Below, in pieces: positions 5,951 through 51,400 of a stretch of 64,000 bases of DNA. Source of the DNA: Macrostomum lignano. Its lineage: Eukaryota. The notes under the pieces were generated by a model. It saw only the letters and a list, made by a program, of their open reading frames with translations, had not been told where the DNA came from and made no database searches. Position 1 is the first letter of the stretch. Every line of letters begins with the position of its first letter. The stretch covers positions 62,001 through 126,000 of the forward strand of contig NIVC01000209.1 of the NCBI GenBank assembly GCA_002269645.1. The letters are read 5' to 3'. Position numbers and translations under genes: made by a program.

Positions 5951-6164
5951 CTGAAAATGTTATTAAGATAAGACTTGAAAACTAAAAGAGATTTATACAT
6001 GTACAATACACAGCTAAATACCTTTTTCTGAAAAATTACACTTTTGAAATCCGAATCGTGGGAGTGGCGTCTTATTCCCGAGAAGGGAAATTTACTGGGG
6101 GGATCCTGGACGACGGGGATTTCTGAATGAGTATTCGTGTGAGTGAATTCTGCTAATTGGATAC

Positions 6165-12071: not shown

Positions 12072-12234
12072 TGCTAATTTTAAAGGCTTAGTAGTTATGT
12101 AAATTTGGGGAATGAGCGGTCACTACGCTGTGCTGAAATGATTTTTGAAAGATATCAATTTTAGATAACAAACTACAGACAGTAAAATCTACTTTGAGTG
12201 CGATGGTAAGTCAAAACATTGAGGGCAGAATCTT

Positions 12235-13125: not shown

Positions 13126-14074
13126 CTTATACTGTGTTGATAGGGAAGTTTAAAATAAAGTATAGCAAGAAACAGACAGCAAAACTTATTATCGATTTCG
13201 CAAATCCTGATTATATATTAAACTACAAAAAACGAAAAAGTTTGTAACAATTTTTACTAAATCATTTCAGTTCATAAATAAAAAGCTTCATTAAGTTTTT
13301 TTGCATAAGCTAAAAGAGTAATGTTGATAAAACCCAAAGCTTAACAGATCAAGCTTTCCTTTAAGATAAGACCAATAAAATGCACGACTTGCTTAAGCGT
13401 GGACTGAATACGTACGCGAACACACGGATAGCTAGGTGTGTGAAAAGGAGATTTTCAAAGTGTTACAGATAGATAAAATACAATGGCTAAAACACTTAGG
13501 AAATGATAAGAGCCATATACGTAGTAAATTAGCAAGTAATAAGGGAGTGTGTATACGTTATCAAGACAAGAATACGATAATAAAAGCTGACAATCAAAAC
13601 CGCTGACAAGTGTCTGTCAGTCTGTTAAACACAATCAGAACAAGCAAAAAATGACCGGGTGCTGATAACTACGTACATGTATATAGCTATTTAACTAAAA
13701 CCAACGCTTATAATGCGCTTTGGAAAGAAACTTCTCAAGTTACAAACATTAGAATGCAAAACGTAATTATGAAAAAATGCTCGCAATAACATAATTTTAG
13801 TATTTTTAATGTTGTAAAACAGGTTAAAAGCAGCACGCATACGTATTTAGAAATTGTAATATTATCGCATGTATATCATCTTTCGATTCAAAATTTACAA
13901 TCAAAAAGAATTTATTAAAAAGATCAAAATTACTACTCGTAACTAGCAAAAAACATCAATCAATAAATCAGAAATATTTCAACAGGTAAAAAATTCAATC
14001 ATTAATTTAAAAACCGATCAAGAAGCATCAAGAAATCAAGAAGAAAAAATTCACCATAACAATGTCCACGTCGC

Positions 14075-17000: not shown

Positions 17001-19448
17001 CTGCGCTAAGCCAATGATTGTGCCCATTAGAGACATTTCACCGTGGTGATAAGAGGACAATTCGGCAACGGATCCGGCTAGCTGAGCTACTTTGATCTCC
17101 TTGGTCAAATTGCGCTTGAAGCAGGTAAACATCACCTTGCGCTGGCCAGGCTTCAATCCGTCAATCATAGACGGTATGGACCGCTCGTTGTCCATATTTG
17201 AGAACAGAATGAGCTCTTTATTAACAAAGTCCGAGTACGAGATGGAGCAAGTGTCCTTTTCGTACAGGTAGGTCTCTTGCAGGCCGAGATCAATGCGACG
17301 CCGTCGCTCGTCCATCCAAGTTGAGAGCCACTCTTTGCGCGAATCGGAGCTCTTGCCGAATGCCAGCTTAATAGCTTCATCGTCCTCTTCGCCCTAGATA
17401 AAATTGTATAGGAGAGAGCATATCTTAAAACTGATTCAAGTCAATATGATTTTAAATGATATTGGGAGAATAATGGGAGACTATGTTGGAATAAAAAATG
17501 ACAATGAAACACTAACCTTGTAGACGAACTTGATTCTATGCCGAACCATATCGTTAAAGTAGTCCTTGGCCTCGGCAGAGGAGGAAGTGCCCAGACCTTT
17601 GTAGTACTTAACTCGCCAGGTGTGCCAGTTAGGAGTTGAGTTGCGCCACTCTTCGAACTCTGGCAGGGAGAAGAAAGCCAACTCCTGCTTATTCTTGAAC
17701 ACCTTTACAATTGGAGTAATAAACTCTTCAATGAAGTTCTGACGCAACAGCTCCGGCCATTTATAGTGCAAGAAGTTGATTATTAATCCTTTGATATGCG
17801 ATCCATCCTGATCTTGATCAGCCATGATCATCACTTTGCCGTAGCGAAGCGTCTTCAAATCCTCCTGTGTATTGTACTTCTTGCTGTACTGCAGGCCAAG
17901 AATCTTTACTAGATTGTTGATCTCCGAGTTCTCCATCATCTGTTGAAAGGAAGCTTCGCGAGCGTTGAGCAGTTTGCCTCTAAGCGGAAACACGCCGTAG
18001 CGATCTCGACCGACAACGCCAAGTCCGGCAACCGCCAGACTTTTGGCCGAGTCGCCCTCAGTAAGAATGAGGACACACTCCAGCGATTGCTTGGTCCCGG
18101 CTAGATTAGCGTCGTCCAGTTTGGCAATGCCTTTTAGCTTGCTGTGCTTAGCCTTGTGACACTGCTTGTCAAGGTTCTGCATAGTTTTAAACTTGACCCA
18201 ATTCATTACGGCTTCAATAACGCCACATTTCCCTACCTTGGCGATAAACTTTTGGCCTAAATCGCACTTTGAGCCAAACATTGATTGCTGAAGCGTCATG
18301 TACTCTTTAGTTTGCGAGTCAAAAGTTGGGTTCTCCACTAGGCAACGGCAGAACAACCATAAATGATTCTTCAAATTGGACGGTTTAATCTGAACACCAC
18401 CCTTGCCTTGCTTTTTTTTAACCACTTCGATTAGCTGCTTGACAATTTGATCGGCCAAGTAGTCGACGTGCCTGCCACCCTTGGTGGTGGCAATTGAGTT
18501 TACGAAACTGATCTGCTTGAAACCGTCGGTGCTCAGTGTGACGGCCACCTCCCAACGATCGTTGATCTGCTCGTGGACGGCTTTCAAAGGATTACCAGCG
18601 TCGTCAGTTTTATCCTTGAGATACAAATCGACGTAGTCTTTAAAAGTTTTCACACCTAGCCTTTTGCCGTTCAAATAGACTTTAATACCTGGACAAGAAG
18701 CTGCAACATCGTAAGCGCGACGAGTGAACAGATCGACCATGTCTTTCGTCAGCTTCTGCATTTTGAATTTTTTCAAGTCAGGCTTGAAAGTTATGCAGGT
18801 AAAGTCTTCTGGGGCAGCATCGGACAGGCGAACATCGAGTGCCTTGGACATGTTTGAATTCCAGGTCTGCTTGAACTTCTTTCTATACTGCTTACAGGAT
18901 GTCTCCAGCGTGAACTCGGTGCTGAATACATTGCACAGCTTAGCACCGTAGCCGTTTCTACCACCTGTAACTTTCTTCTCGTCATCATTAAAATTGCTAG
19001 ACGTAAGCAAGTGACCAAAAATTAACGTTGGCACAAGCATTTTCTCTTCCTTGTGCTCCACAACGGGTATGCCCTTGCCATTGTTCCAGATCTTCATGAC
19101 ATTCTCTTCTGGTTGGATGTCGATTTTGATGCAAGACATGCTCGGATCGCGTTGTTTATTGTCTGCTGCATTCACCAAAATTTCGTCGAATATCTTGTAC
19201 AGTCCGGGTACAAACGTTATTTCGCGTTGAACCATCGCTTCTGATTCGGAATCGAATACCCACATAGACTGGGTAACCGGTTCAACGGATCCAATGTAGG
19301 TGTCCGGTCGAAGCAATATGTGCTCCAACTGGGTCTTCTTTTGATAGGTCTTTTCAATTGACGATCCTTTGCCAGCCTTGGCGGAACTCTTGTTCAGATC
19401 CGGCAACGGAACAAGATGCGTAGACGCAAAGGCTTCCAAGTCCGCCAT
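14075..19448 (-). CDS. TOP2: DNA topoisomerase II
   Basis: Exons 19448-17517, 17393-16111, 15350-14075 (phases 0 and 2 consistent). GHKL motifs EILVNAADN and TGGRNGYGAKL, TOPRIM EGDSA/DQDQDGSH, catalytic SPRYIF, K/S-rich tail ending VKYVYSDSE. Confidence 0.97.
15440..16010. repeat. 41-bp minisatellite in TOP2 intron 2
   Basis: Unit GCTAAGGAGACATTAGTAGCCTCATCGATTACTAGAAAGTG. Confidence 0.95.
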
Positions 19449-33827: not shown

Positions 33828-35818
33828 TTCGTGGGTGCCTTCGTCGCCGCGCTCGGAGACCAGCGCGAGGCGGAGTATTCCGACATCAGCACCACCGTTA
33901 GAGCCGCTGCGGAGCAGACGGTCCCACTGATGCGGCCAGCGCAGAAATTTCGCTGCCTGTCTGGCAGAGCGACCCGACCATCAGGCAGGCGCGGCTCAAC
34001 ATCGAGCGACTCCGCAGAAACCGGCGGCCCACAGGCGACGCTGAAGACGCGTTTGAGCGCCTTCTAGACGAGCGGCAGCAGGCCGCTGTCGACGACGCCG
34101 TCAGGTCCAGCACTGCAGCCGGCCCCGACGTGAAGAGCCGCGCAGTGTGGACGGCCGTCAGGACTCTGACGGGGCGCAAAAAGCGCGTGGCGCTGAACCT
34201 GACTGGCGACACCCCGGAGGAGCGCAGGAATGAATTGCGCGACTTCTTCGTCGGCATCGTGAACGCGCCCGCGTCGCCGCTGCCTTCCAGTTTTGCGCTC
34301 CCACTGGACACGCCGCTCCCAGCTGAGGAGGACTTCTGCACCAGCCCAGTCACCACGGAGGGCGTTGTGCTGTTCGCTCGGAAAACATCAGACGGCAAGG
34401 CGCTCAGCCCCGACGAAGTCCCGGTCGAAGCGCTGCGGCTCCGCTGTGTGGCCTCCCAGGTCACAAGCGTCATGAACCGCGTGCTCGCCAGCGCCCCCGC
34501 GCCCACCGAGTAGACCGTCGCGCACATCGTGCCGATACCAAAGAAAGCAGGGACAACGCGGAAAGAAGACCACCGCGGGATCTCGCTGATGTCCTGCACC
34601 GCGAAGCTCTTCAACCGGCTGCTGCTCGATCGTCTGCGGTCGGTGCTGGACCGGTACCTGGGGTACGAGCAGAACGGATTCCGGCCGCAACGCGGTACAG
34701 TGACACAGATCCTTGCACTCCGCCGTGTCATCGAGGAGGCGCGCATCCGCCAGTCTACGCTGATGATTGTCTTCGTTGACTTTCGAAAGGCGTTTGACTC
34801 GGTGTTGAGAGCCGCGGGGAGCCTACCGGGTCCCGCAGCAGCTAATCGACGCTATCATGTCACTGTATCGCGATACTCAGCTGCTGTGGTGACGGCGGAC
34901 GGCCTGTCTGACCTGTTCGATACTTCATCAGAAGTTCTGCAGGGCGACACGCTAGCGCCGTTCCTCTTTGTGCTGCTGCTGGACTGGGTGCTTCCCCTCG
35001 GCCAATGACGGCAATTCCTGCTGCGCAGATGCATCGGTCGCCGCTACGGCGAAAAGCGCCTAAGCGTGCTTGGTTACGCCGACGACCTCGCCCTCCTGTC
35101 CTCGTCCGTTGAAGGCGCCCAGCGCCAGATCGACAGGCTGGTCGAGGTGGCATCGAGCGTCGGTCTAATCGTCAACACGCTGAAGAGCGAGGTGCTGACT
35201 GTGCCGGCCGACATCCCAGCGGACCTGACGTGCCGCGGCGCAGATGGGCAGACGACCAAGCTCGCACGCTGCCAGCGGTTCACCTACCTCGGCGGTCTGG
35301 TGCCCCACGTGGAAGAGGACCTCCGGCGGCGCAGAGGACTTGCCTGGGCGGCCTTTCGTTCGATCCGAGGCGTCCTCCAGTCTGGAGCGCTGCCCGACCG
35401 CCAGAGGGCTCGGCTGTGGCAGGCGGTGGTCGAAACCGTTCTGCTCTACAACGCCGAGACGTGGACGCTGACGGCTACGCTAGAGCGGCAGCTGGACTCG
35501 GCGCACTCAGGGCTGCTCCGCGTGGCCTTTCGAGCTGACGAGAGCGTCGGGACCGAGGCCCTGTACGATCGGGCCAAGCTGCAGCGCCCGTCCACCATCC
35601 TGCGCCGGCGGCGACTTCAACTGGCGGGCCACGTGATCCGGGCCGAGGGCTACTGCCCCCAACCTGTTCAGGACGTCCTGCTGTGCGACGCTGGGGCGCC
35701 CGACACTGCCAACGGAGCGGACTTTTTTCGCTCCCAGGCTCTGCGGCGCCCCATCTGACGCGCCCTGCTCAACTGTGACCTTTTGTTTGCAGGGCCGCGT
35801 ATTTTGTTGTTGTTGTTG
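33828..35818 (+). mobile_element. 5'-truncated, decayed non-LTR retrotransposon (RTE-like RT)
   Basis: RT motifs IVPIPKK...HRGISLMSCTAKLFN, QNGFRPQRGT, FVDFRKAFDS, VLQGDTLAPFLF, GYADDLALL, FTYLG; in-frame TAG at 34511 and frameshifts; (TTG)n tail at ~35803-35820; candidate TSD TTGGTCGCAA at 33818-33827 and 35819-35828. Confidence 0.9.
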
Positions 35819-36358: not shown

Positions 36359-39300
36359 CTAGGCGCTAGTGTCTTCGTTGTCAGAGTTGCAGATGCTGCC
36401 AATAGTTCTGTTGGCGTCAACGATAGCAATATCGCCTCCGGATTGTCTAACAAAGATCTTGGCATTCTTGTTGATGCTGCACTTGCCCAGGTAGCGTACT
36501 TGAATTAATTTGCCCTTCAGATGCGAGTTGCATAGATCGCCCGCTTCCTATTAGAAGGCATTTGTTCGCAGATTATTTGATTTGAAAAATTTTGTTAGAA
36601 TGCATAAATGACCTGTTACATGGGGCACTCGTCCTGAAGTTAAATAATTTGCTTTAAATTTGAGAAAAATTCCTGTCTAAATGTGAGTACATGCATTTGC
36701 CCTGAGCGCAGGGCGCTTAGCCAGCACTTTTCAGAGAGACAATTAACGGCGCCAGCACCAGGGGCTTTAGCACCAGGGGCTCTAGCACCAGGGCCTTTAG
36801 TACCAGTGGCTTTAGCACCAATGGCTTTAGCACCAAGGGGGCTTTAGCACCAGGGGCTTTAGCACCAATGGCTTTAGCACCAGGGGTCTTAGCACCAGGG
36901 GCTTTAGCACCAGGGGCTTTAGCACCAGGGGCGCCAGCACCAGGGGCTTTAGCACCAATGGCTTTAGCACCAGGGGTCTTAGCACCAGGGGCTTTAGCAC
37001 CAATGGCTTTAGCACCAAGGGGCTTTAGCACCAGGGGCTTTAGCACCAGGGCCTTTAGCACCAGGGCCTTTAGCACCAGGGGCGCCAGCACCAGGGGCGC
37101 CAGCACCAGGGGCGCCAGCACCAGGGGCGCCAGCACCAGGGGCGCCAGCACCAGGGGCGCCAGCACCAGGGGCGCCAGCACCAGGGGCGCCAGCACCAGG
37201 GGCGCCAGCACCAGGGGCGCCAGCACCAGGGGCGCCAGCACCAGGGGCGCCAGCACCAGGGGCGCCAGCACCAGGGGCGCCAGCACCAGGGGCGCCAGCA
37301 CCAGGGGCGCCAGCACCAGGGGCGCCAGCACCAGGGGCGCCAGCACCAGGGGCGCCAGCACCAGGGGCGCCAGCACCAGGGGCGCCAGCACCAGGGGCGC
37401 CAGCACCAGGGGCGCCAGCACCAGGGGCGCCAGCACCAGGGGCGCCAGCACCAGGGGCGCCAGCACCAGGGGCGCCAGCACCAGGGGCGCCAGCACCAGG
37501 GGCGCCAGCACCAGGGGCGCCAGCACCAGGGGCGCCAGCACCAGGGGCGCCAGCACCAGGGGCGCCAGCACCAGGGGCGCCAGCACCAGGGGCGCCAGCA
37601 CCAGGGGCGCCAGCACCAGGGGCGCCAGCACCAGGGGCGCCAGCACCAGGGGCGCTAGCACCAGGGGCGCCAGCACCAGGGGCGCCAGCACCAGGGGCGC
37701 CAGCACCAGGGGCGCCAGCACCAGGGGCGCCAGCACCAGGGGCGCCAGCACCAGGGGCGCCAGCACCAGGGGCGCCAGCACCAGGGGCGCCAGCACCAGG
37801 GGCGCCAGCACCAGGGGCGCCAGCACCAGGGGCGCCAGCACCAGGGGCGCCAAAGCTTGCTACAAGCTTGCTGCTGGACTTTTCCTAGCTAGTGATTGGT
37901 GGAGCGATGGGCACTATTTGCTTCCCAGTTCCCAATTACGCTGCTCTTGCCTGAATTGTAGCAACTGTCTAAAAATAGATAGACGTGGCCCACTACCCGC
38001 TTAACCCCGGAAATGTTGATTCCCCGGAAATTAAACAGCACTCACCTCTTCACCGCAGTGATGCAAGTAGGAATTATTCATAAATCGAACTTCGTTGTCG
38101 CCAGAAATGCGGATGTACACACCGTCGGGCTTGGCGACGAGCACCTCGGCCAGGTATGCGTGGCCCAGTTTAAAGCGTACATTTTTTGCATTCTTGATCC
38201 GTCGCCTCTCTCTGAGCTGATGAATGACCCACCTGCTCAACAGCTGCAAGAATCCAAGGACAATGCCGATGCCCAGTAGGACGAATAGGCCGCACAGGTA
38301 CTCGAATCCCAGAGGCACCTTGTTCTCAATGTCCGTCTGTCCGGAGTAGCAGCGATTCAAATCGAAATACTTCGAGCGCAGCTGAGCAAAATCGACGTCT
38401 TTGCGCGTTTTTAACTGATTAGTCAACTCCGCTTCGAATCGGAACCCTTTTCGATAGAACCAAGTCAGAAAGTGGCTGTTGGCGATGTTGCCCATCACGG
38501 TCAACTTGCAGTCTTTATTCTTTACGTAGCTTAACGTATCGGCGCTGGCAATCAGAATGAAATTTGGATCGGCCAGCACCTTAGCAACGGCTTCTTCGGT
38601 GCTGTTCAGGTACATCTCGTCAGGCCACTCTCGCACGGCCCTGGCGTGCACTTTTGGCCAGTAGGTCTGCACTTCGGTGTCCACTAGCGAGTCTCTGATG
38701 TAGCCCCACTTGTAGCCCTTGCTATCGGCCAGGTCGCCTACAGAGGCGAAGAAAACGTGCCCCTCTGGCTTGATAAGAAAGGCTACCAGGTTGCTCAGGT
38801 AGGTTGTCATGTACAGCAGAGTGGAAAACCAGAGTAGCAGGGTGAAGAGTCGGCTGGACAGCTTCTTCGGCTCGGTCTCCACCTTGGACATGAGAAACGA
38901 GGACAGGACTAGAAAGAAGGATTCGTACGGCGAGTACATTCGCTGGTTCTCCGTGTTCGGGCTGATCTTGTCGCATGCGTACAGAGTGGCCGAGAGCAGT
39001 ACAATTGCGATTACTATGCTCACCCAGACGTAGAACGAGAACGGATGAAACACGTGCAGAAAGTCGGTGGAATGAACTACCTTTCTTCTGAGCATCTGAA
39101 TGCCCTCCTGAACCATGTCAACCGAGAGATCGACGTGATCGACTCGATCGAACGTTGGCGACAGAAAATTCAGGCTAACATCGGCGGACTAAAACGAGAG
39201 ATACATGTACGTTGAACAATTTTGAAAAGATTTTTAGGCTGCAAAAATGTTTCTTAAACAGGTTCGTGTAAAATTATAACACCTTACCCCGTTTTTAACC

Positions 39301-42300
39301 ATTTCGAACACTTCGTTCTGGCTTTTGACAGGTATCAATTTGTACTCGAAGCCCAGATGAAGCCGCAACGCCTCCACAATCTCAATGCAGAGTCCTCGAG
39401 CAGTTTTTGTAGCGCTGTTGTAGCTGTAGAAGTACGGCTCGGTCTGGATAGTTTTCGACGATGGATTCCAGGATTCCAGGGTTAGCAGCTACATGAAAAG
39501 GTCCCAGATCCTAGATCCCAGATCCTAGATCCCAGATCCTAGATCCCAGATCCTAGATCCCAGATCCTAGATCCCAGATCCTAGATCCCAGATCCTAGAT
39601 CCCAGATCCTAGATCCCAGATCCTAGATCCCAGATCCTAGATCCCAGATCCTAGATCCCAGATCCTAGATCCCAGATCCTAGATCCCAGATCCTAGATCC
39701 CAGATCCTAGATCCCAGATCCTAGATCCCAGATCCTAGATCCCAGATCCTAGATCCCAGATCCTAGATCCCAGATCCTAGATCCCAGATCCTAGATCCCA
39801 GATCCTAGATCCCAGATCCTAGATCCCAGATCCTAGATCCCAGATCCTAGATCCCAGATCCTAGATCCCAGATCCTAGATCCCAGATCCTAGATCCCAGA
39901 TCCTAGATCCCAGATCCTAGATCCCAGATCCTAGATCCCAGATCCTAGATCCCAGATCCTAGATCCCAGATCCTAGATCCCAGATCCTAGATCCCAGATC
40001 CTAGATCCCAGATCCTAGATCCCAGATCCTAGATCCCAGATCCTAGATCCCAGATCCTAGATCCCAGATCCTAGATCCCAGATCCTAGATCCCAGATCCT
40101 AGATCCCAGATCCTAGATCCCAGATCCTAGATCCCAGATCCTAGATCCCAGATCCTAGATCCCAGATCCTAGATCCCAGATCCTAGATCCCAGATCCTAG
40201 ATCCCAGATCCTAGATCCCAGATCCTAGATCCCAGATCCTAGATCCCAGATCCTAGATCCCAGATCCTAGATCCCAGATCCTAGATCCCAGATCCCAGAT
40301 CCTAGATCCCAGATCCTAGATCCCAGATTCCACTGTGGTTTTCAGGTTACCTCGTAAGCTGCAAAGACGATTAGGCTTCGCGATATGGCACCAGCTCCAT
40401 TGTACTCTGGTCTGTATGGCGACAAACTGGTTCCATCGTTGATCCACTTTCCAGTCAAGCTAAAAATGTCGCTTTCTGGTTTGCTTCGGTTGCTGCGGAA
40501 CACGTCAATTTGCACTTTTGAGCGCACGTGAGTGGACTCGTTGTACGTGAAGGGGCCAGTCAGAGGGAACACGATACTCGTCTCCTGTCAAATTAAAGTA
40601 AGTTTGAGGTTCAGCGTCATTAGGCTCTGATCTTATTTGGCTGGTTCCGGTTTGTCCGGTTCCGGTTTGTCCGGTTCCGGTTTGTCCGGTTCCGGTTTGT
40701 CCGGTTCCGGTTTGTCCGGTTCCGGTTTGTCCGGTTCCGGTTTGTCCGGTTCCGGTTTGTCCGGTTCCGGTTTGTCCGGTTCCGGTTTGTCCGGTTCCGG
40801 TTTGTCCGGTTCCGGTTTGTCCGGTTCCGGTTTGTCCGGTTCCGGTTTGTCCGGTTCCGGTTTGTCCGGTTCCGGTTTGTCCGGTTCCGGTTTGTCCGGT
40901 TCCGGTTTGTCCGGTTCCGGTTTGTCCGGTTCCGGTTTGTCCGGTTCCGGTTTGTCCGGTTCCGGTTTGTCCGGTTCCGGTTTGTCCGGTTCCGGTTTGT
41001 CCGGTTCCGGTTTGTCCGGTTCCGGTTTGTCCGGTTCCGGTTTGTCCGGTTCCGGTTTGTCCGGTTCCGGTTTGTCCGGTTCCGGTTTGTCCGGTTCCGG
41101 TTTGTCCGGTTCCGGTTTGTCCGGTTCCGGTTTGTCCGGTTTCCAGAGAATGTTGGTCGATTTCTAGTCATAAAAATATGGCGCCCTTTGAAGACAGAAT
41201 TAGAAACTTTGGCCTGACTTGATCTTCAGGAGGTCTACTATATTTGACTGGCTGTAATTTGCCACAAATTGACTCCCCTGAACCCTAACCCTAAACCCTA
41301 CTCTAACAATAAACCAAACCAAACGCCAAACCCTAATCTAAACCTCAACCTTAACCCTAAACTAAAGCGCCGGCAGTTAATTTTTGACAGTCAAATGTCA
41401 CCGACAGTCAAATGTCACCGACAGTCAAATATCATCAACAGTCAAATATCATCAACAGTCAAATGTCATCAACAGTCAAATGTCATCAACAGTCAAATGT
41501 CATCAACAGTCAAATATCATCAACAGTCAAATGTCATCAACAGTCAAATATCATCAACAGTCAAATGGCATCAACAGTCAAATGTCATCAACAGTCAAAT
41601 ATCATCAACAGTCAAATATCATCAACAGTCAAATATCATCAACAGTCAAATGTCATCAACAGTCAAATATCATCAACAGTCAAATATCATCAACAGTCAA
41701 ATATCATCAACAGTCAAATGTCATCAACAGTCAAATGTCATCAACAGTCAAATGTCATCAACAGTCAAATGTCATCAACAGTCAAATATCATCAACAGTC
41801 AAATATCATCAACAGTCAAATATCATCAACAGTCAAATGTCATCAACAGTCAAATGTCATCAACAGTCAAATGTCATCAACAGTCAAATATCATCAACAG
41901 TCAAATATCATCAACAGTCAAATGGCATCAACAGTCAAATGTCATCAACAGTCAAATGTCACCAACAGTCAAATGTCACCAATCAGCATAAGCTGCCCTT
42001 ACCGTGGCAATCGTCTCTGTCAAAGTGGCACTCGTGGCCAATCGGCTCCATCTGCTGAACGACTTCAAAAAATGATTCATGCAGTCCAACAGAAACGGCT
42101 GCAGCAGTTCGCTTTGCGAATATTTGTTGTGATCGGATAGGCGGAACGTGTAAAACTCGACTTCGCTTCGATAGAATTTGGTAAGATAGCGCTCGCTGTC
42201 GAACTATGATGGGACATGGAATGGTGAATAATGGCATCATGCAGGAATGTATTCAGTGCATTGGTTGTTAAATTAAGCAAGGCCTAGGTGTCACATCCTG

Positions 42301-45300
42301 CTGGGGGGGGGGGCGTGGCCTAGAAGTCTAGCGCGGCCGATCTGAGGTGCCAGCGGCCCAAGTTTGCTGGGATAAACTGGAATCTCGGCTTGGCTCTGCT
42401 CGTGCAATTACCGGCCTTGAGGGCCAACCCCCCAAGACACAGTGAAGTGTACATGCCTAACGATAAATAAAGTTAGTGCCGCTGTACACTCCCGTGTGAG
42501 TGTGTGCCTGTGCGTATGACTGCGTACGTATCCGCGCGCTTGTGTGCCTTCTCAGGGGAGTCGGCGGAATGGGCAGTAATGCCTCTCGCCGGTCGTGTGA
42601 CAATGTCGCTCAAAGACCAACTCACTAACCGAATGTTGCTTTAACTCCAGGTCTTAAACGAATCCTTGCTCTAATTACAATAAGGTTAAATAGGTCATTA
42701 GTGCACCCGATGCTGCTGACCCAACTCAGTTTATCAAACAAGTTATTCTTTCATCCCGGTAAAACGCCGAACAACCAGAAGGTACTCACCAGACTGGGAA
42801 GGAAAAAGTACTGTGACGATACGAAAATCCCCGCTCTTGAAGCCTGAAAAAAAATTCAGATCACTTAAACAAAATGGACATAAAAATGCTAAGTATTGTC
42901 ATACTGGCATCGGATTAGCTATCCTCAAACCTGAGTGAGAGCTCTCTCCATAAGCGGCAGATTGGGCTCGTCAAACAGCATAATCCAGCCCATACCGGAT
43001 GACAGAGTGTTCGGGTTGTAACGGGCAAATAAATTGTAGATTTGCTCATCCGAACTATTCGCCCGGATGGTGTGAACGCTGAATACTCGTCTGTCAAAGT
43101 TCACCAGGAACTGGCTGCTGGCTGCGGGGAACACAGTGGGTGCTCTGATCTGTTTATTACGCATTGACCACATTCTGTAAAATCGTATTGTCTACCGGCT
43201 GTAATCATGGAGGAAAAGAACAACTTAGGAGTGCTACTTAAGGAGCGGGATATTTTTGTTTTAAGTCTCACTGTAAAGATAACAAGAACTACTGTGTTAG
43301 TTGTACCATTGACCTTCTGTCACAGACAATCACAATAGACTGTCGTTTTTTCGGGAAACTTCATGAATCAAGAATAGAATAGTCTATGGTTTTAAGTGGG
43401 AGGGGGCTGCAAGAAGTTCAATGATCGAATTCTATAATTAGTATCGCCTATGACGATCTAAATGGCAATTTGGACAAATCAAAACGGGACGCAAGCCAGA
43501 CATTCAAGCCAGGCCGCAGACTCCGGCTGCTTGGGAATACACGACCATAGAATGTGGAATGTACAATGTAAATGTAAAGCCATGTAGAAGAAAGAATGTA
43601 AAAGCCATTCAAAACGGAAAATCTCTAAATTTTTTTATATCTCACAGCCACTGGAATATTTAAAAGTGAACACAAAGTGTCCGTTACCGGAAGCAAAACA
43701 AAAGTAACTCAGAACTCTTAGAGCGTCAGGAAAGGATTTTCATCGAGTTTCTTAACCAAGAATTCTCTCATTTCCTGATCGGTCTTGTGCAATCCTTCTT
43801 TCCAAGCCAATGACTACTTGGTGATAACTTTTTGGGGAGACTCTCCAAAAGTCAGTGGAAACACGACTTCTAGTGTCTATGGCAGAAAACTCCCATCAAT
43901 TCCTCCACAAGCCAGTACGAGAGATCATCAGAGATGGAAGAATCTTCACTTTTTTTGCTTTGCTTTTGCTTCAGCGCGTGTCTATGGCAAATACCTCTCA
44001 CCCCTACGGGGCTCCATGGAAGTGTGTAAGCCTTCCTTGTAACTGAAGGCTGTAATTAAATCAGATTAGCACTTCATCTTTATTCCTTCCTCCCGATCCA
44101 TTGTTTTTCATTGATTCTGCGCTTTTGTCTGTGGCCATAACTTAATTATACAACAGGACAACGCCAAAACCTACAATCAGCTGATTAAAGGTAAAAAACA
44201 ATGGCAAAAGTTGCTTTGAAAGTGGCTCTTACCTGGAGTACCATCGGACACGGCCACCAGAGAAGTTCTCTTGTAAACCAAAGAAACCGAGTAGAGAGCT
44301 TCGCTCAGGTGATAATTGTCTATTTGTATCTCAAATATATTTGGCGTGCCTGGCGGAAAGCTGAATACATTTTTCTTAATAATGAAGTAAGGAATTTCCA
44401 TTGAGTAGGAGGCGATAGCCAGGCTGATGTAGTAATCAGATAGCACAGCTGCCGCACCGACCATGGTGAGGTTCTGTTGAACTGTGCGGATGGGAAGATC
44501 AGGTTAAAATCAATAAAATTCTATGCACATGCTAACATCATTGTTTACGTTCCGTCTCTCCTAGTCGCTGTCACTCTCTACTGTCACTCCCTGATAATCC
44601 CCGACTGTCACTCCATGATAATCCCCGACTGTCACTCCATGATAATCCCCGACTGTCACTCCATGACAATCCCCGACTGTCACTCCCTGATAATCCCCGA
44701 CTGTCACTCCATGATAATCCCCGACTGTCACTCCATGATAATCCCCGACTGTCACTCCATGATATTCCCCGACTGTCACTTCATGACAATCCCCGACTGT
44801 CACTCCATGACAATCCCCGACTGTCACTCCATGATAATCCCCGACTGTCACTCCATGACAATCCGGCTGTCACTCCATGATAATCCCCGACTGTCACTCC
44901 ATGACAATCCGGCTGTCACTCCATTATAATCCCCGACTGTCCCTCCATGATAATCCCCGACTGTCCCTCCATGACAATCCCCGACTGTCACTCCATGATA
45001 ATCCCCGACTGTCACTCCATGATAATCCCCGACTGTCACTCCATGACAATCCCCGACTGTCACTCCATGATAATCCCCGACTGTCACTCCATGACAATCC
45101 GGCTGTCACTCCATTATAATCCCCGACTGTCACTCCATGACAATCCCCGACTGTCACTCCATGACAATCCCCGACTGTCACTGCATGACAATCCCCGACT
45201 GTCACTCCATGATAATCCCCGACTGTCACTCCATTATAATCCCCGACTGTCCCTCCATGGCAATCCCCGACTGTCACTCCATGATAATCCCCGACTGTCA

Positions 45301-46771
45301 CTCCATGATAATCCCCGACTGTCACTCCATTATAATCCCCGACTGTCCCTCCATGACAATCCCCGACTGTCACTCGATGTCAATCGCCAGTGCCACCCCA
45401 TGTTTCGCTCTTTCACCTCGTTGCGCGTTTAATTTAAGCCAGCTTTCACAAAAGCGATATCACATTCAACATGCAGACTCACCAGTTTCTGCGTGGGAGG
45501 CACCTTCAAACAGGCCTCTGACTGGCAGATAAGTGAAGTTAAGCGATATGCCAGTAGTCAGGACATAGGGAAAAAGTGTCCTATAAAGGTTTCGCTGAGT
45601 TTCCAGAGATTTCACGGCGGAGAAGACATCGTAATCTTCAATAGCTGAAAATTTAACAAATCAGAGTGGTTCATAATGCTTTATGGTTCTGAACAACATA
45701 GCAATGGCTGAAAATTTAACAAATCAGAGTGGTTCATCATGCTTTATGGTTCTGAACAACATTAGCAATGGCTGAAAATTTAACAAAACAGAGTGGTTCA
45801 TCATGCTTTATGGTTCTGAACAACATTAGCAATAGCTGAAAATTTAACAAATCAGAGTGGTTCATCATGCTTTATGGTTCTGAACAACATTAGCAATGGC
45901 TGAAAATTTAACAAATCAGAGTGGTTCATCATGCTTTATGGTTCTGAACAACATTAGCAATGGATGAAAACAACAATTAGTTATAAATCTATACAAGGGG
46001 CAAAATGAATAAAGAATTAATTGCTAATCTATCCAAGATCATGGATACATGCAAATTAGAATTTGGATTGCTAATCTATCCAAGATCATGGATAAATGCA
46101 ATTAGAATTTGGATTGCTAATCTATCCAACATCATGGATAAATGCAAATTAGAATTTGGATTGCTAATCCATCCAACATCATGGATAAATGCAATTAGAA
46201 TTTGGATTGCTAATCTATCCAACATCACGGATAAATGCAATTAGAATTTGGATTGCTAATCTATCCAACATCATGGATGAATGCAATTAGAATTTGGATT
46301 GCTAATCTATCCAACATCATGGATAAATGCAATTAGAATTTGGATTGCTAATCTATCCAACATCACGGATAAATGCAATTAGAATTTGGATTGCTAATCT
46401 ATCCAACATCATGGATGAATGCAATTAGAATTTGGATTGCTAATCTATCCAACATCATGGATGAATGCAATTAGAATTTGGATTGCTAATCTATCCAACA
46501 TCATGGATAAATGCAATTAGAATTTGGATTGCTAATCTATCCAACATCATGGATAAATGCAATTAGAATTTGGATTGCTAATCTATCCAACATCATGGAT
46601 AAATGCAGTTAGAATTTGGATTGCTAATCTATCCAACACGGCAGTTAAGCATTGCAACTCACCGACAAGCAGATTTCTGCTGCCTTTCTTCACCTGTCCA
46701 TCAATCTTGGTTGGCAAGCAGCCAAGCAGCAGCAACAGAAGTGACCAGGAGCAAAAGCAGGAGACTCTCAT
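36359..46771 (-). CDS. Divergent ionotropic glutamate receptor-like protein with a putative C-terminal S1/OB-fold domain
   Basis: Exons 46771-46663 (signal peptide), 45644-45483, 44481-44233, [junction unresolved], 43174 or 43149-42931, 42203-42003, 40584-40351, 39488-39288, 39188-38046, 36547-36359. S1-LBD EPYF...GLCIEIVEALRLHLGFEYKL, M1 HPFSFYVWVSIVIAIV, M3 TYLSNLVAFL, M4 PLGFEYLCGLFVLL. Confidence 0.85.
36745..37850. repeat. 15-bp GC-rich minisatellite in the last iGluR intron
   Basis: (GGCGCCAGCACCAGG)n with a GCTTTAGCACC variant block. Confidence 0.97.
39505..40330. repeat. 14-bp (7+7) minisatellite filling an iGluR intron
   Basis: (GATCCCAGATCCTA)n, near-perfect. Confidence 0.97.
40637..41140. 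repeat. 15-bp minisatellite in an iGluR intron
   Basis: (GGTTCCGGTTTGTCC)n. Confidence 0.97.
41281..41362 (+). repeat. Degenerate telomere-like (CCCTAA)n tract
   Basis: AACCCTAACCCTAAACCCTAC...AACCCTAATCTAAACCTCAACCTTAACCCTAAAC. Confidence 0.6.
41388..41982. repeat. 17-bp minisatellite in an iGluR intron
   Basis: (CAACAGTCAAAT[G/A]TCAT)n. Confidence 0.95.
42306..42680 (+). mobile_element. Possible tRNA-derived SINE
   Basis: Starts GGGGCGTGGCCTAG..GTCTAGCGCGGCCG (A-box-like), GC-richer body within an AT-rich intron; no clear B box or TSD. Confidence 0.35.
43725..43830 (-). mobile_element. Possible Tc1-like transposase remnant
   Basis: Minus-strand peptide WKEGLHKTDQEMREFLVKKLDENPFLTL* recalls the Tc1 HTH linker (..KT...R.L.....NPF.T); short and interrupted. 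Confidence 0.25.
44580..45375. repeat. 24-bp minisatellite in iGluR intron 2
   Basis: (CCCCGACTGTCACTCCATGATAAT)n. Confidence 0.95.
45640..45965. repeat. 64-bp tandem repeat that includes the 3' splice site of iGluR exon 2
   Basis: About 5 copies of CAAT[A/G]GCTGAAAATTTAACAAATCAGAGTGG...; each reads ttaaattttcag|C[T/C]ATTG on the minus strand. Confidence 0.9.
46020..46638. repeat. 46-bp minisatellite in iGluR intron 1
   Basis: (AATTAGAATTTGGATTGCTAATCTATCCAACATCATGGATAAATGC)n. Confidence 0.95.
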
Positions 46772-47555: not shown

Positions 47556-47894
47556 ATTCCCTTACTAGAGATAATCTACTACTGTCAGCTGTCAAGGTAG
47601 CAGCCAAATTCGTAGGTACCGCCAGCACTAGAAGCGCAAAAGCTATAGGGGGTCATGTCCCCCATCGCCCCCCACCCCTTGCCCAGGCCCATGCTTCGAA
47701 TCGCTCACTCGAAAAAAAAGAGACAATGGAAAAGGCACCAAAAGAAGCGATTTCCGTTCGATGTGGAAGCGCTAACAAATTGTATTTACTTAGCGAAGGC
47801 ATTTATAACAAAAATACGAATTATACATGTATATGGAATTAAAAGCTATTGGACACACATATCAACTATCTACACATTGTCAAAATTTACAAGT

Positions 47895-48485
47895 AGACAC
47901 AATAATCACCTGTAAGACACAACCATCAATTCTTAGACACAATCATCACCTGTCAGCATCACCTGTTAGACACAATCATCACCTGTCAGCATCACCTGTT
48001 AGACACAATCATCACCTGTCAGACACAGTCATCACCTGTTAGACACAATCATCACCTGTTAGACACAATCATCACCTGTCAGACACAGTCATCACCTGTT
48101 AGACACAATCATCACCTGTTAGACACAAGCATCACCTATTAGACACAATCATCACCTGTTAGACACAAGCATCACCTGTTAGACACAATCATCACCTGTC
48201 AGACACAGTCATCACCTGTTAGACATAATCATCACCTGTTAGACACAAGCATCACCTGTTAGACACAAGCATCACCTGTTAGACACAATCATCACCTGTT
48301 AGACATAATCATCACCTGTTAGACATAATCATCACCTGTTAGACACAAGCATCACCTGTTAGATACAGTCATCACCTGTTAGACACAGTCATCACCTGTT
48401 AGACACAGTCATCACCTGTTAGACACAGTCATCACCTGTTAGACACAGTCATCACCTGTTGGACGCAGTCATCACCTGTTAGACA
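47895..48485 (+). repeat. 20-bp minisatellite, left arm of an inverted pair
   Basis: (AGACACAATCATCACCTGTT)n. Confidence 0.95.
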
Positions 48486-48496
48486 ACCTAGTTAGT

Positions 48497-51400
48497 CTAT
48501 AATCCGGCGTAATTTCTTAGAAATTGACGTAGAAACCTCAGCGGTCTCCAGTAGCAGTCTCTGTTTCCGCCAGCGGCAGCAGGTCTGGGCGATCGCCAAC
48601 CAGAATCCAAAGTTGCTTTGAGCAACAGAAAACTTTTGTCATCTCTACACCGCAACAGATGGATTGGCCAGCTCCAGCTGTTGCCCTCTTCTAGGGGAAG
48701 AGCTGGCCAAGCATTAAGCCACGCAGAAGGAGTCTTCGCTGAAAAGGTTCCGTCCTCCAGTGGGATCACGACGAAAGGTTCCTGTATAGGAAGGAGATTA
48801 AATGGCGGTTGATACATATGGATATTATTGTGTCCAACAGGTGATGATTGTGTCTGACAGGTGATGATTGTGTCTGACAGGTGATGCTTGTGTCTGACAG
48901 GTGATGACTGTGTCTAACAGGTGATGATTGTGTCTGACAGGTGATGATTGTGTCTAAGAAATGATGATTGTGTCTAACAGGTGATGATTGTGTCTAAGAA
49001 ATGATGATTGTGTCTAACAGGTGATGATTGTGTCTAACAGGTGATGATTGTGTCTAACAGGTGATGATTGTGTCTAACAGGTGATGATTGTGTCTAACAG
49101 GTGATGATTGTGTCTAACAGGTGATGATTGTGTCTGACAGGTGATGATTGTGTCTAACAGGTGACGATTGTGTCTAACAGGTGATGATTGTGTCTGACAG
49201 GTGATGATTGTGTCTAACAGGTGACGATTGTGTCTAACAGGTGATGATTGTGTCTAACAGGTGATGACTGTGTCTCACAGGTGATGCTTGTGTCTGACAG
49301 GTGATGCTTGTGTCTGACAGGTGATGCTTGTGTCTCACAGGTGATGCTTGTGTCTGACAGGTGATGCTTGTGTCTAACAGGTGATGACTGTGTCTAACAG
49401 GTGATGACTGTGTCTGACAGGTGATGACTGTGTCTGACAGGTGATGATTGTGTCTCACCGCACAGTCGGGCCTATAGAAGGCCAGTCCGCTGCCCTCGCT
49501 ATCACTGAGCCGGCCTCTAACGCACAACGCCCTGTCGCCGTGACACCGAAGCCACGCCTGCTCCCACCAGTGAATCCGAGGAAGAAATGGCGAATTATAG
49601 ATTCGAACTTGCGTTGTCTGCTCGCGGATACGATGCCGAGTTATTTTGAAACGTTTACCATCGTTCTCTGTTGTCATGGTAACCAAATAGTCGCTTTCTT
49701 GTCCAAGCCACGACAAACAGTGAAAACCGCAAACCGGTCCTTCAATGCAAATCCGCCGGGCTAGGCAAAGACGAGAATTCGACTCCCTGTCTCCATGGCA
49801 ACCGCAGTTGACGTTAATTAGCGAGACGAATCCGTTAGAATAGGCGCTCTGCACCGTCAGGACTGCCAACTGACGAGAGATCGGGAGCTTCACAGCGCTA
49901 AAAAGAAAGCTCGTGCCGGAATCGAACTTCATGGAAACGAACGGAATCTTCGCAGATGCTCTCTGTTCAATAGGCAAAGTTAAAAGCAGCAGACGGCTTT
50001 CTGTAGTTATCAGCAGAAGCAAAGGTCGGCCAGAGCAGCTCGGGCAGGAGCGATAAGACAGCGCATCAAGTACTCTTTCTTTGTTGCGCAGCTGAAATAC
50101 TCCAATCGGAGCAACCTTGGCGCAACAATTCAAGCGAATCGGTACGACAGCGTAACTGGCTTCGGACTCTGTCCAGCCCGGAAGCACGAGGTAATCTGCC
50201 GAGCCGCGAGCCGGATCAGCCGACATCAAAGCGTCAAAGTTGCAGACTTGAAAGCAGAGCCGAATGATGTGCAGTTGAGCTGTGTCAAGCAGCCGGATTT
50301 CGACCGTTGCTGCTGCTGCTGTGCTGTCTTGGGTGCCGGAGTCTGCGGATGCGGTCACACTCTGTAACAGTGTGCGGAACAGTGAACGGTACTTAAACCT
50401 GAGTGACCAACTTTAGAGTGACCAATTTAAAATGATACCGAAACCGGAGTGACCAATTTAAAATGATACTGAAACCGGAGTGACCAAATTAAAATAATAC
50501 TGAAACCTTGGAGTGACCAAATTAAAATGATACTAAAACCTTGGAGTGACCAACTTAATATGATACTGAAACCGGAGTGACCAACTTAAAATGATACTGA
50601 AACCGGAGTGACCAACTTAATACGATACTGAAACCGTAGTGACCAATTTAAAATGATACTGAAACCTTGGAGTGACCAATTTAAAATGATACTGAAACCT
50701 TGGAGTGACCAATTTAAAATGATACTGAAACCGGAGTGACCAACTTAATACGATACTGAAACCGAGACCGATTTAAAATGATACTGAAACCTTGGAGTGA
50801 CCAACTTAAAATGGTACTGAAACCGGAGTGACCAACTTAAAATAATACTGAAACCGAGACCAATTTAAAATGATACTGAAACCTTGGAGTGACCAACTTA
50901 AAATGATACTGAAACCGGAGTGACCAACTTAAAATGATACTGAAACCGGAGTGACCAACTTAAAATGATACCGAAACCGGAGTGACCAATATAAAATGAT
51001 ACTGAAACCGGAGTGACCAATATAAAATGATACTGAAACCGGAGTGACCAATATAAAATGATACTGAAACCGGAGTGACCAATATAAAATGATACTGAAA
51101 CCGGAGTGACCAATATAAAATGATACTGAAACCAGATTGATTGAATACATTCATAATGCTGAAGCTACAATGATCACAACTTTAACCCTATCCCGGATGC
51201 CAGTCTCACTGCTCGCAACAGCTGCAGACTGCATGAGCTGCAATCTTTTTCCCTGACATCGGCAGCCGCCACCTCCCGCAGCTCCTGGCAAGCCGCTCCG
51301 CTGCAGGCCAGCAGTTGCCAGGCGCGCCGACCTGCGGCAGCGCCGTGAAGTGCATCATTGTCAGCCGATGGGTTCAGCAGCCTACGAGCCAGCATCCGCC

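What the first reader, a model, noticed from the sequence alone, without database searches (positions are those of the whole stretch)
36359..38180. Ionotropic glutamate receptor with a cytoplasmic PNPase-like S1 (OB-fold, RNA-binding) domain
Seen: the big exon ends GAG|gtgagt at 38046 and joins in phase 0, across the 15-bp minisatellite intron, to ttctaatag|GAA at 36547, running open to TAG at 36359. The tail after M4 then reads RFKLGHAYLAEVLVAKPDGVYIRISGDNEVRFMNNSYLHHCGEE|EAGDLCNSHLKGKLIQVRYLGKCSINKNAKIFVRQ. Knowledge (recalled): the S1 domain of metazoan PNPase follows the pattern [22 protein letters not shown]...LLHNTQL...[13 protein letters not shown]...MRLSRK. The tail matches it in order and spacing (G..Y.A.V, GV.I.I, hydrophobic-N..L, G..IQV.Y.G). 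iGluR tails are normally disordered with PDZ motifs, and I know of no channel-S1 fusion. Inference: a ligand-gated channel that could tether RNA or ribonucleoprotein at the membrane. The domain is split by the intron, so ORF-level annotation misses it.
Basis: partly seen in the sequence, partly recalled or inferred. Interest (0 to 1): 0.88.

Follow-up and report, generated by a model that had tools for sequence, protein, structure and literature searches.

The report
Glutamate-receptor channel with PNPase-type S1 tail
A flatworm (Macrostomum lignano) glutamate-receptor-type channel gene ends in a cytoplasmic tail of about 80 residues that appears to descend from the S1 RNA-binding domain of the enzyme PNPase, intron included; I found no report of this combination, and whether the tail binds RNA is untested.

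Summary
On the minus strand the large exon ends GAG|GTGAGT at 38046. It joins in phase 0 to TAG|GAA at 36547 and runs to TAG at 36359. The GenBank CDS PAA92080.1 (Macrostomum lignano, a transcript-derived annotation) has exactly this junction.

The standard tests for an S1 domain fail. Pfam S1 gives no hit, a generic S1 profile gives nothing, and AlphaFold2 without an alignment gives pLDDT 33. Pfam also misses a genuine invertebrate PNPT1 S1 fragment, so this failure is not decisive.

Targeted tests support descent from the metazoan PNPT1 S1 domain:
- A profile of 124 PNPT1 S1 domains scores the tail 7.7 bits (5 of 20,000 shuffles reach it). hhalign gives P = 2.6e-4.
- PNPT1 has a conserved phase-0 intron 11 residues before its [10 protein letters not shown] motif. 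The tail's intron is also phase 0 and 11 residues before GKLIQVRYLG.
- Alignments anchored at the intron, without gaps, give P of about 3e-6 for the first half and 3e-4 for the second half.

The S1-type fold is not shown independently, and RNA binding is untested. The tail is only about 20% identical to PNPT1 S1 and lacks several canonical RNA-contact residues. I rate it a new variant of a known kind, of moderate to high interest.

The parts
36359..45639 (-). iGluR-family gene, partial at its 5' end. Its nine exons are 45639-45483, 44481-44233, 43121-42931, 42843-42790, 42203-42003, 40584-40351, 39443-39288, 39188-38046 and 36547-36359.
   Evidence: A spliced mapping of PAA92080.1 (P0003) onto the window gives all GT-AG introns, 857 codons plus a stop, and 8 amino-acid differences. 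Pfam on P0003 gives Lig_chan 1.2e-18, SBP_bac_3 2.8e-7 and Lig_chan-Glu_bd 1.8e-6.
38046..39188 (-). Large exon. It holds the end of ligand-binding lobe 1, M1 (39041-38973), the pore-loop region (38927-38886), M3 with YLSNLVAFL (38849-38775), lobe 2, M4 (38300-38238), the basic linker (38237-38172) and the first half of the S1-like domain.
   Evidence: Among the window and the two copies in L001 this exon has 11 synonymous and 2 non-synonymous differences, binomial P = 3.6e-5 against neutrality.
38046..38171 (-). First half of the S1-like domain (KLGHAYLAEVLVAKPDGVYIRISGDNEVRFMNNSYLHHCGEE). It lies in the same exon and reading frame as M4.
   Evidence: It aligns without gaps over 40 columns to PNPT1 S1 positions 1-40 once the two residues next to the junction are skipped. 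The score is 26.3 against -24.5 +/- 8.7 for shuffles, reached by 3 of 1,000,000 shuffles and by none of 24,368 decoy windows.
36548..38045 (-). Phase-0 intron (GTGAGT...TAATAG, 1,498 bp) containing a 15-bp minisatellite at 36748-37852.
   Evidence: The position and phase match the conserved last intron of PNPT1...LDQRK|(V/I)xHPSAL....
36443..36547 (-). Second half of the S1-like domain (EAGDLCNSHLKGKLIQVRYLGKCSINKNAKIFVRQ), at the start of the terminal coding exon.
   Evidence: Aligned without gaps from its first codon to the first codon of the PNPT1 terminal exon, it scores 13.6 against -22 +/- 9. That score is reached by 331 of 1,000,000 shuffles. Offset 0 is the only positive offset among -12 to +12.
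36359..36442 (-). C-terminal extension (SGGDIAIVDANRTIGSICNSDNEDTSA) and the stop codon TAG at 36361-36359.
   Evidence: In the alignment-guided AlphaFold2 model this stretch has pLDDT below 50. PNPT1 also carries a non-conserved extension after S1 in its terminal exon.

Best explanation
**What it is.** The locus encodes a divergent iGluR-family subunit of Macrostomum lignano. Directly after M4 and a basic linker, its last two coding exons encode a domain of about 80 residues. This domain descends from the C-terminal S1 domain of metazoan PNPase (PNPT1) and keeps that gene's last phase-0 intron.

**Shown here:**
- the exon structure and the splice junction;
- iGluR family membership;
- purifying selection on the channel exon;
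- above-chance similarity to PNPT1-type S1 that is collinear across both exons;
- the matching intron position and phase.

**Inferred origin.** A DNA-level copy of the 3' end of a PNPT1 gene, intron retained, was joined in frame inside the last exon of an iGluR gene. It then diverged strongly, to about 20-23% identity.

**Inferred mechanism.** If the subunit assembles into tetramers as known iGluRs do (not tested here), each channel carries up to four small OB-fold-like modules on its cytoplasmic face. These would replace the usual disordered, PDZ-ligand-type tail and act as a binding platform.

My split of the functional readings, given a real S1 origin:
- about 25%: the tail still binds single-stranded RNA;
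- about 35%: it was repurposed to bind a protein or another ligand;
- about 40%: it is a tolerated relic with no specific ligand.
For: **Junction and transcript.**
- The junction and peptides are confirmed in the sequence.
- The same junction is present in the transcript-derived GenBank CDS.
- M4 and the first half of the domain share one exon and one frame, so the fusion is genomic and not a chimeric transcript.

**Gene integrity.**
- The 9-exon gene is intact.
- Lig_chan is significant.
- The large exon shows 11 synonymous against 2 non-synonymous differences.

**Similarity to PNPT1 S1.**
- The human PNPT1 S1 sequence recalled from memory was validated by a 98%-identical hit.
- The PNPT1 S1 profile scores the spliced tail 7.7 bits. 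This is above all 2,000 shuffles in one run, and 5 of 20,000 reach it in a larger run. The best of 1,092 unspliced open segments of the window scores 4.8 bits.
- hhalign aligns 64 columns at P = 2.6e-4 with 42% probability.
- MAFFT independently places the tail in the same register.
- Smith-Waterman against 120 PNPT1 fragments gives a maximum of 50 (8 of 1,000 shuffles reach it) and a mean score reached by 2 of 1,000 shuffles.

**Intron.**
- The PNPT1 intron was read at DNA level in two lineages. One is CGA AAG|GTAAAA. The other is a CAG|GTA AAT CAC CCC acceptor opening the terminal exon.
- Intron-anchored ungapped tests give P of about 3e-6 and 3.3e-4 for the two halves. Decoy windows agree.

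**Calibration.**
- Genuine bS1-type S1 domains score a median of 8.1 bits on the PNPT1 profile, so 7.7 bits lies in the range of true distant homologues.
- Pfam S1 misses the genuine invertebrate PNPT1 S1 fragment P0149.
Against: - Pfam S1 gives no hit at E <= 10.
- A profile of 237 real bS1-type S1 domains gives no reportable match, and hhalign against it gives 0.1%. PNPT1 S1 domains score a median of 26.6 bits on that same profile.
- phmmer of the tail against 1.84 billion representatives finds no PNPase. It finds only the gene's own products and two spurious repeat proteins.
- Identity to PNPT1 S1 is about 20%, while the listed PNPT1 fragments (vertebrate, arthropod and unidentified) are mostly about 65-78% identical to the human S1 query. 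Very fast divergence must therefore be assumed.
- AlphaFold2 on the single sequence gives pLDDT 33.
- The S1-like model (pLDDT 60) and its Foldseek S1 hits come from a PNPT1 alignment and are not independent.
- No orthologue or paralogue with this tail is known, so constraint on the tail cannot be measured. Its coding part shows one synonymous difference, and its substitution density against the flanks is only marginal (Fisher P = 0.05).
- Of the five RNA-contact residues of E. coli PNPase S1 that I recall (F19, F22, H34, D64, R68), the tail has Y at F22 and K at R68 but N, C and D at the other three.
- Shuffle-based P-values assume independent, identically distributed sequence.
Confidence: 0.78

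Rival explanations
1. The origin from S1 is real, but the tail is a non-functional or repurposed relic. On this reading a segmental duplication in this highly duplicated genome appended part of PNPT1 to an iGluR. The tail has since drifted, is tolerated, and does not bind RNA. This rival concerns function only and shares the origin with the best explanation.
For: - Identity to PNPT1 S1 is only about 20%.
- The generic S1 signature is lost.
- Three of the five canonical RNA-contact positions are changed (alignment combined with recalled residues).
- The gene is known from a single species.
[quoted passage not shown] This locus itself carries a tandem duplication in that assembly.
Against: - Both halves are still in frame and collinear with PNPT1 S1 after heavy divergence.
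- The splice sites and the 62-codon terminal open frame are intact. This is unexpected under long neutral drift.
- The beta-strand-like hydrophobic pattern is retained in all five predicted strands.
- An aromatic residue (Y) sits at the F22 position.
Confidence: 0.55
2. The resemblance is chance. On this reading the tail is a lineage-specific orphan sequence rich in beta-strand-forming residues, and the intron match is coincidence.
For: - No Pfam, PDB or large-database hit links the tail to S1.
- The generic S1 profile is negative.
- The HMMER score against the PNPT1 profile is only 7.7 bits, lower than the chance-level Pfam hits to NifU and PAS_8 at about 13 bits.
Against: - The two independent intron-anchored ungapped tests give about 3e-6 and 3.3e-4. 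Their product of about 1e-9 survives a look-elsewhere factor of 10,000 families.
- None of 24,368 decoy windows reaches the first-half score.
- Offset 0 is the only positive register for exon 2.
- The intron has the same phase and the same distance to the motif, and in both genes the remainder lies in the terminal exon.
Confidence: 0.1
3. The splice is not used in vivo. On this reading the protein ends at the TAA at 38031 (…HHCGEEVSAV) and carries only half of the S1-like sequence, and the annotated junction is an artefact of transcript assembly.
For: - I did not see reads.
- In the Mlig_3_7 scaffold the annotated CDS joins the donor of duplicated copy 1 to the single terminal exon about 7 kb away, skipping copy 2. 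That is an unusual model.
Against: - The annotation pipeline uses only RNA evidence.
- The donor (GTGAGT) and acceptor (TAATAG) are canonical.
- Exon 2 matches the PNPT1 terminal exon from its first codon (P = 3.3e-4). That match is hard to explain if exon 2 is never translated in this frame.
- The window has a single copy, so no skipping is needed.
Confidence: 0.08

Closest known systems
S1 domain of metazoan polynucleotide phosphorylase (PNPT1), which is the C-terminal domain after KH
   Same: - The two align collinearly over about 62-75 residues, sharing G..Y.A, GV, NS.L and G..IQV.Y.G.
- The first 40 columns have the same loop lengths and align without gaps.
- Both have a phase-0 intron 11 residues before the GxxIQVxYxG motif.
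- In both, the rest of the domain, a non-conserved C-terminal extension and the stop codon lie in the terminal exon.
   Different: - Identity is only about 20-23%.
- The tail has two extra residues next to the junction and one or two in the beta4-beta5 loop.
- There are no RNase PH or KH domains anywhere in the window.
- The domain is attached to a membrane channel instead of an exoribonuclease.
- H34-, D64- and F19-equivalent residues are not conserved.
Ionotropic glutamate receptors and the invertebrate IR-type relatives
   Same: - Lig_chan is above the Pfam gathering score, and the ligand-binding lobes are detectable.
- The order M1, pore loop, M3, lobe 2, M4 is kept.
- An M3 gate motif variant, YLSNLVAFL, is present.
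   Different: - The sequence is very divergent. A word-indexed search of 5.8 billion proteins found only one other iGluR, at 24% identity.
- No recognisable ANF_receptor amino-terminal domain was found by Pfam.
- The C-terminal tail is a beta-rich S1-like module. From general knowledge, iGluR tails are usually disordered with a PDZ ligand or phosphorylation sites.
Generic S1 / OB-fold RNA-binding domains (bS1, RNase E, eIF2alpha, DHX8, Rrp4/Csl4; Pfam PF00575)
   Same: The predicted strand order (beta1, beta2, beta3, short helix, beta4, beta5) matches in the alignment-guided model, and Foldseek returns only S1 domains. This result is biased by the input alignment.
   Different: There is no sequence-profile match to Pfam S1 or to a profile of 237 bS1-type domains.

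Membership tests
Ionotropic glutamate receptor family (Pfam Lig_chan PF00060) | Lig_chan model matched above the gathering score | tested here: met
   70.0 bits (cut-off 30.8) on the window product and 67.7 bits on PAA92080.1.
Ionotropic glutamate receptor family | Bilobed periplasmic-binding-protein-type ligand-binding domain interrupted by the channel | tested here: inconclusive
   SBP_bac_3 scores 30.8 bits (cut-off 26.4) spanning residues 368-689. Lig_chan-Glu_bd scores 28.5 bits, just under its cut-off of 30.
Ionotropic glutamate receptor family | M3 gate motif of the SYTANLAAF type | tested here: met
   TTYLSNLVAFL is read directly at 38849-38775. It is a variant of the motif. The comparison motif comes from general knowledge.
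Ionotropic glutamate receptor family | Ligand-gated cation conductance | not testable with these tools
   This needs heterologous expression and electrophysiology.
S1 RNA-binding domain (Pfam PF00575) | Match to the Pfam S1 model at or above the gathering score | tested here: not met
   There is no S1 hit at E <= 10. As a control, the genuine invertebrate PNPT1 S1 fragment P0149 is also missed, and the human-like P0126 reaches only 27.5 bits.
S1 RNA-binding domain | Similarity to a generic (bS1-type) S1 profile | tested here: not met
   The tail is not reported by hmmsearch --max, while 1,631 of 2,000 shuffles are. hhalign gives 0.1% probability.
S1 RNA-binding domain | Five-stranded antiparallel OB beta-barrel | tested here: inconclusive
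   AlphaFold2 on the single sequence gives pLDDT 33. With a PNPT1 alignment it gives pLDDT 60, five strands and a short helix, and the top Foldseek hits are all S1 domains. That result is biased by the alignment.
S1 RNA-binding domain | Conserved RNA-contact residues (F19, F22, H34, D64, R68 of E. coli PNPase S1; recalled from Bycroft et al. 1997) | tested here: inconclusive
   By the alignments the tail has D, Y, N, C and K at these positions. That is two of five compatible. Metazoan PNPT1 itself lacks the two phenylalanines.
PNPT1-type S1 domain (descent from the PNPase C-terminal domain) | Above-chance sequence similarity to a profile of metazoan PNPT1 S1 domains | tested here: met
   7.7 bits, reached by 5 of 20,000 shuffles. 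hhalign gives P = 2.6e-4 over 64 columns. Smith-Waterman mean score is reached by 2 of 1,000 shuffles.
PNPT1-type S1 domain | Gene structure: a phase-0 intron 11 residues upstream of GxxIQVxYxG, with the remainder in the terminal coding exon | tested here: met
   The PNPT1 intron was read in L002 and L004 and inferred from 9 or more exon fragments. The tail has the same phase and spacing. Anchored tests give 3 of 1,000,000 and 331 of 1,000,000 shuffles.
Polynucleotide phosphorylase (the enzyme) | Two RNase PH domains and a KH domain upstream of S1 | tested here: not met
   tblastn with KH-S1 fragments finds no PNPT1-like sequence elsewhere in the window. Pfam on the whole product shows only iGluR domains. 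The product is not a PNPase.
RNA-binding proteins | Binds RNA | not testable with these tools
   This needs EMSA or anisotropy with the recombinant tail, or CLIP.

The most novel reading that the evidence does not exclude
On the most novel reading, the S1-derived tail is a folded OB domain that still binds single-stranded RNA. A tetrameric ligand-gated channel would then display up to four RNA-binding modules at the inner face of the membrane. It would physically tether mRNA or RNP particles at the site of chemosensory or synaptic signalling. That would be a direct channel-to-RNA link with no described precedent.
Probability: 0.18. Interest if true: 0.85.

Novelty: new variant of a known kind. 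Interest (0 to 1): 0.62.

Why it matters
iGluR cytoplasmic tails are, from general knowledge, disordered hubs for scaffolding proteins. A folded nucleic-acid-binding-type domain in that position is a domain architecture I could not find described.

If the tail binds RNA, it would be a simple physical link between a ligand-gated channel and local RNA. M. lignano is transgenesis-capable (PMC5730564), so this could be tested in the animal.

Even if the tail is inert, the locus is a clear example of exon-level domain capture. A mitochondrial RNA-decay enzyme donated its last one and a half exons, intron included, to a membrane channel.

The case also shows that standard domain scans miss such a capture, while intron-position evidence recovers it.

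Tried and rejected
1. **CBS domain for exon 2.** The only PDB sequence hit was the CBS protein 2ef7 at E = 1.1. There is no Pfam CBS hit. I rejected it as noise.

2. **DEAH-helicase OB domain.** UniProt A0A1I8FCD9 (P0001), an ML2-assembly model of this locus, is named 'OB_NTP_bind domain-containing protein'. The model is a frame-shifted mosaic. Current Pfam finds nothing in it at E <= 10. I did not pursue it.

3. **Repeat proteins.** P0004 and P0005 from the 1.84-billion-protein search are T/N-rich repeat proteins. Their E-values come from summing 5-12 weak stretches. I treat them as spurious.

4. **AlphaFold2 on the tail alone.** The result (pLDDT 33) is uninformative, so I made no Foldseek search on that model.

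5. **Other PNPT1-derived pieces.** I looked for KH or RNase PH sequence in the window and found none.

6. **Literature.** There is no paper on an iGluR-S1 fusion and no mention of Mlig005955.

7. **Selection on the tail.** Between the window and the Mlig_3_7 copies the S1-like coding part has only one difference, synonymous at 36497. One more, at 38205, lies in the basic linker and is also synonymous. This is too few to test.

Full report
**Observation.**

- The large exon (39188-38046) ends ...GGT GAA GAG|GTGAGT.
- Without splicing, the frame stops four codons later (VSAV, TAA at 38033-38031).
- The acceptor is ttctaatag|GAA at 36547.
- The frame then runs 62 codons to TAG at 36361-36359.
- Both pieces are multiples of three, so the junction is phase 0.
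- The 1,498-bp intron contains a 15-bp minisatellite of 73.5 copies at 36748-37852.

**Organism and transcript support.**

A full HMMER scan of the tail against 1.84 billion representative proteins returned four proteins.
- One, P0003, is identical over all 108 tail residues, including HHCGEE|EAGDL. It is GenBank PAA92080.1, 'hypothetical protein BOX15_Mlig005955g1, partial', from Macrostomum lignano assembly GCA_002269645.1.
- A second, P0001, is a frame-shifted mosaic model of the same locus from the older ML2 assembly.
- The remaining two, P0004 and P0005, are repeat proteins whose scores are sums of many weak stretches. I treat them as spurious.

The Mlig_3_7 annotation was built solely from RNA evidence, using StringTie and TACO on RNA-seq, a de novo transcriptome, and TransDecoder (PMC5730564). 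The junction is therefore transcript-derived, although I did not see reads myself.

Mapping P0003 onto the window gives a clean 9-exon gene with GT-AG introns throughout. It has 857 codons and 8 amino-acid differences.

**The channel part.**

- Pfam gives Lig_chan at 2.5e-19 and 1.2e-18, SBP_bac_3 above its cut-off and Lig_chan-Glu_bd just below its cut-off.
- M1, the pore-loop region, an M3 gate variant (YLSNLVAFL) and M4 are readable.
- The Mlig_3_7 scaffold (L001) carries the segment corresponding to window ~43150-37070 twice in tandem. This gives three copies of the large exon to compare.
- Those copies differ at 13 positions, 11 synonymous and 2 non-synonymous. The binomial P is 3.6e-5 against neutrality.
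- The channel is therefore under purifying selection and is not a pseudogene.

**Is the tail an S1 domain? Standard tests.**

These are negative or uninformative.
- Pfam gives no S1 hit at E <= 10. The best hits are chance-level NifU and PAS_8 at about 13 bits.
- phmmer against PDB sequences gives only a CBS protein at E = 1.1.
- I built a profile from 237 real S1 domains cut from 120 bS1-type fragments returned. It does not report the tail at all, while it reports 1,631 of 2,000 shuffles. hhalign against it gives 0.1%.
- AlphaFold2 on the tail alone gives pLDDT 33.

Pfam's failure is not decisive, however. The same scan misses a genuine invertebrate PNPT1 S1 fragment (P0149) and gives the human-like one only 27.5 bits.

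The recalled human PNPT1 S1 sequence was validated by a 98%-identical database hit. The same search returned 142 PNPT1 fragments from vertebrates and arthropods, of which 120 were listed and used.
- A profile of 124 S1 domains cut from them scores the spliced tail at 7.7 bits. This is above all 2,000 shuffles, and 5 of 20,000 reach it.
- The best of the 1,092 unspliced open segments in the window scores 4.8 bits.
- hhalign aligns 64 columns across the exon junction at P = 2.6e-4 with 42% probability.
- Smith-Waterman against the 120 fragments gives a maximum of 50, reached by 8 of 1,000 shuffles. The mean score is reached by 2 of 1,000 shuffles, and the reversed tail scores a maximum of 32.
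- MAFFT independently puts the tail in the same register: G..Y.A, GV, NS.L and G..IQV.Y.G.
- As calibration, genuine bS1-type S1 domains score a median of 8.1 bits on this narrow profile. A score of 7.7 bits is therefore what a true but distant S1 relative gives.

**Independent evidence: the intron.**

Many PNPT1 hits are single-exon translations from genomic contigs, and their ends cluster. I read the DNA in two cases.
- A vertebrate-type contig ends the exon at CTT GAT CAA CGA AAG|GTAAAA, that is LDQRK|.
- In a Logan contig carrying an invertebrate-type PNPT1 sequence (the tool does not name its organism), the upstream exon ends LDQRK|GT. The terminal exon opens ttattaCAG|GTA AAT CAC CCC (|VNHPSAL...) and runs to the stop codon.

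PNPT1 therefore has a conserved phase-0 intron 11 residues before the G of [10 protein letters not shown]. The rest of S1, a variable extension and the stop codon follow in the terminal exon.

The tail has a phase-0 intron 11 residues before the G of GKLIQVRYLG, followed by the rest of the domain, an extension and the stop codon in the terminal exon.

I tested this with no alignment freedom.
- Exon 2 was aligned without gaps from its first codon to the first codon of the PNPT1 terminal exon. It scores 13.6 against -22 +/- 9 for shuffles, and 331 of 1,000,000 shuffles reach it. Offset 0 is the only positive offset among -12 to +12.
- The exon-1 half was aligned without gaps over 40 columns backwards from the junction, after skipping two residues (EE). 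It scores 26.3 against -24.5 +/- 8.7, and 3 of 1,000,000 shuffles reach it, taking the best of five skips.
- In six-frame decoys from the window, none of 24,368 forty-residue windows reaches 26.3 (maximum 15.9). Ten of 40,803 twenty-two-residue windows reach 13.6.

The two halves are independent.

The intron-anchored alignment, with the call-51 (L004) PNPT1 sequence below the tail, is:

    [64 protein letters not shown]
    [40 protein letters not shown]|[22 protein letters not shown]

It has 14 identities in 62 aligned positions.

**Fold.**

With the PNPT1 alignment as input, AlphaFold2 gives the following.
- The mean pLDDT is 60, rising to 76-83 over the first 40 residues.
- The strands are at residues 10-19, 22-27, 33-37, 61-69 and 77-81, with a short helix at 38-41.
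- The C-terminus (residues 84-109) is disordered.

The listed Foldseek matches in the PDB are nearly all S1 domains or proteins that contain one, including human PNPase 9kjr. This shows compatibility only, because the alignment imposes the fold.

**Interpretation.**

The fusion point between M4 and the domain lies inside one exon and one reading frame. It is therefore genomic and not a read-through artefact.

The retained intron argues for a DNA-level copy of the 3' end of a PNPT1 gene rather than a retrocopy. No other PNPT1-like sequence lies in the window.

Divergence is extreme, at about 20% identity. By contrast, the listed PNPT1 fragments are mostly about 65-78% identical to the human S1 query. 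The generic S1 signature is also gone.

Of the five RNA-contact residues of E. coli PNPase S1 that I recall (F19, F22, H34, D64, R68), the tail has D, Y, N, C and K.

I therefore hold two things apart.
- Origin from PNPT1 S1, and expression as a cytoplasmic tail, I consider likely (about 0.8).
- RNA binding I consider possible but unproven (about 0.2 overall). Repurposing or a tolerated relic are at least as likely.

**Novelty.**

The CDS is already in GenBank as a hypothetical protein, and its precomputed domain list contains only iGluR families. I found no paper describing an iGluR-S1 architecture and none mentioning this gene.

It is a new variant of a known kind: an iGluR with a captured S1-type domain as its tail.

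Noticed in passing
window 36748-37852, 39502-40332, 40643-41141, 41387-41982, 44580-45379, 45639-45970: Most introns of this gene hold a long, nearly perfect minisatellite. The arrays are 15 bp x73, 14 bp x59, 15 bp x33, 17 bp x35 and 24 bp x34. A sixth array (64 bp x5, 45639-45970) lies at the 5' end of the mapped CDS. Their translations create many spurious long ORFs.
   Followed up: partly
L001 (NIVC01000064.1, Mlig_3_7) 5244-12590 and 12620-18435, compared with window ~43150-37070: The Mlig_3_7 scaffold carries this roughly 7.4-kb part of the gene twice in tandem, with the junction inside the 15-bp minisatellite. The window has one copy. The GenBank CDS uses copy-1 exons and skips copy 2 to reach the single terminal exon. 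This is either a real duplication or an assembly artefact.
   Followed up: partly
window 34529-35758 (+): A frame-broken reverse transcriptase lies about 600 bp beyond the gene's stop codon on the opposite strand. Pfam RVT_1 gives 1.6e-16 and 2.7e-4 in two adjacent ORFs. It is probably a decayed non-LTR retrotransposon.
   Followed up: partly
P0001 = UniProt A0A1I8FCD9 (maps to window 42203-36365): The older ML2-assembly gene model of this locus is a frame-shifted mosaic. UniRef nevertheless names it 'OB_NTP_bind domain-containing protein'. Current Pfam gives no hit in it at E <= 10.
   Followed up: yes
window 47894-49455: Long arrays of a repeat with a period of about 20 bp match the 5' flank of the Mlig_3_7 locus in both orientations. 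Their translations give HHLSDT-type repeat ORFs.
   Followed up: no
PNPT1 fragments (for example P0212, P0217, P0221): Some PNPT1 fragments, including those 90-96% identical to the human sequence, show an extra exon boundary at EIQ|VKYFG. This boundary is absent from the L004 contig and from the tail, whose single-intron layout matches L004.
   Followed up: partly
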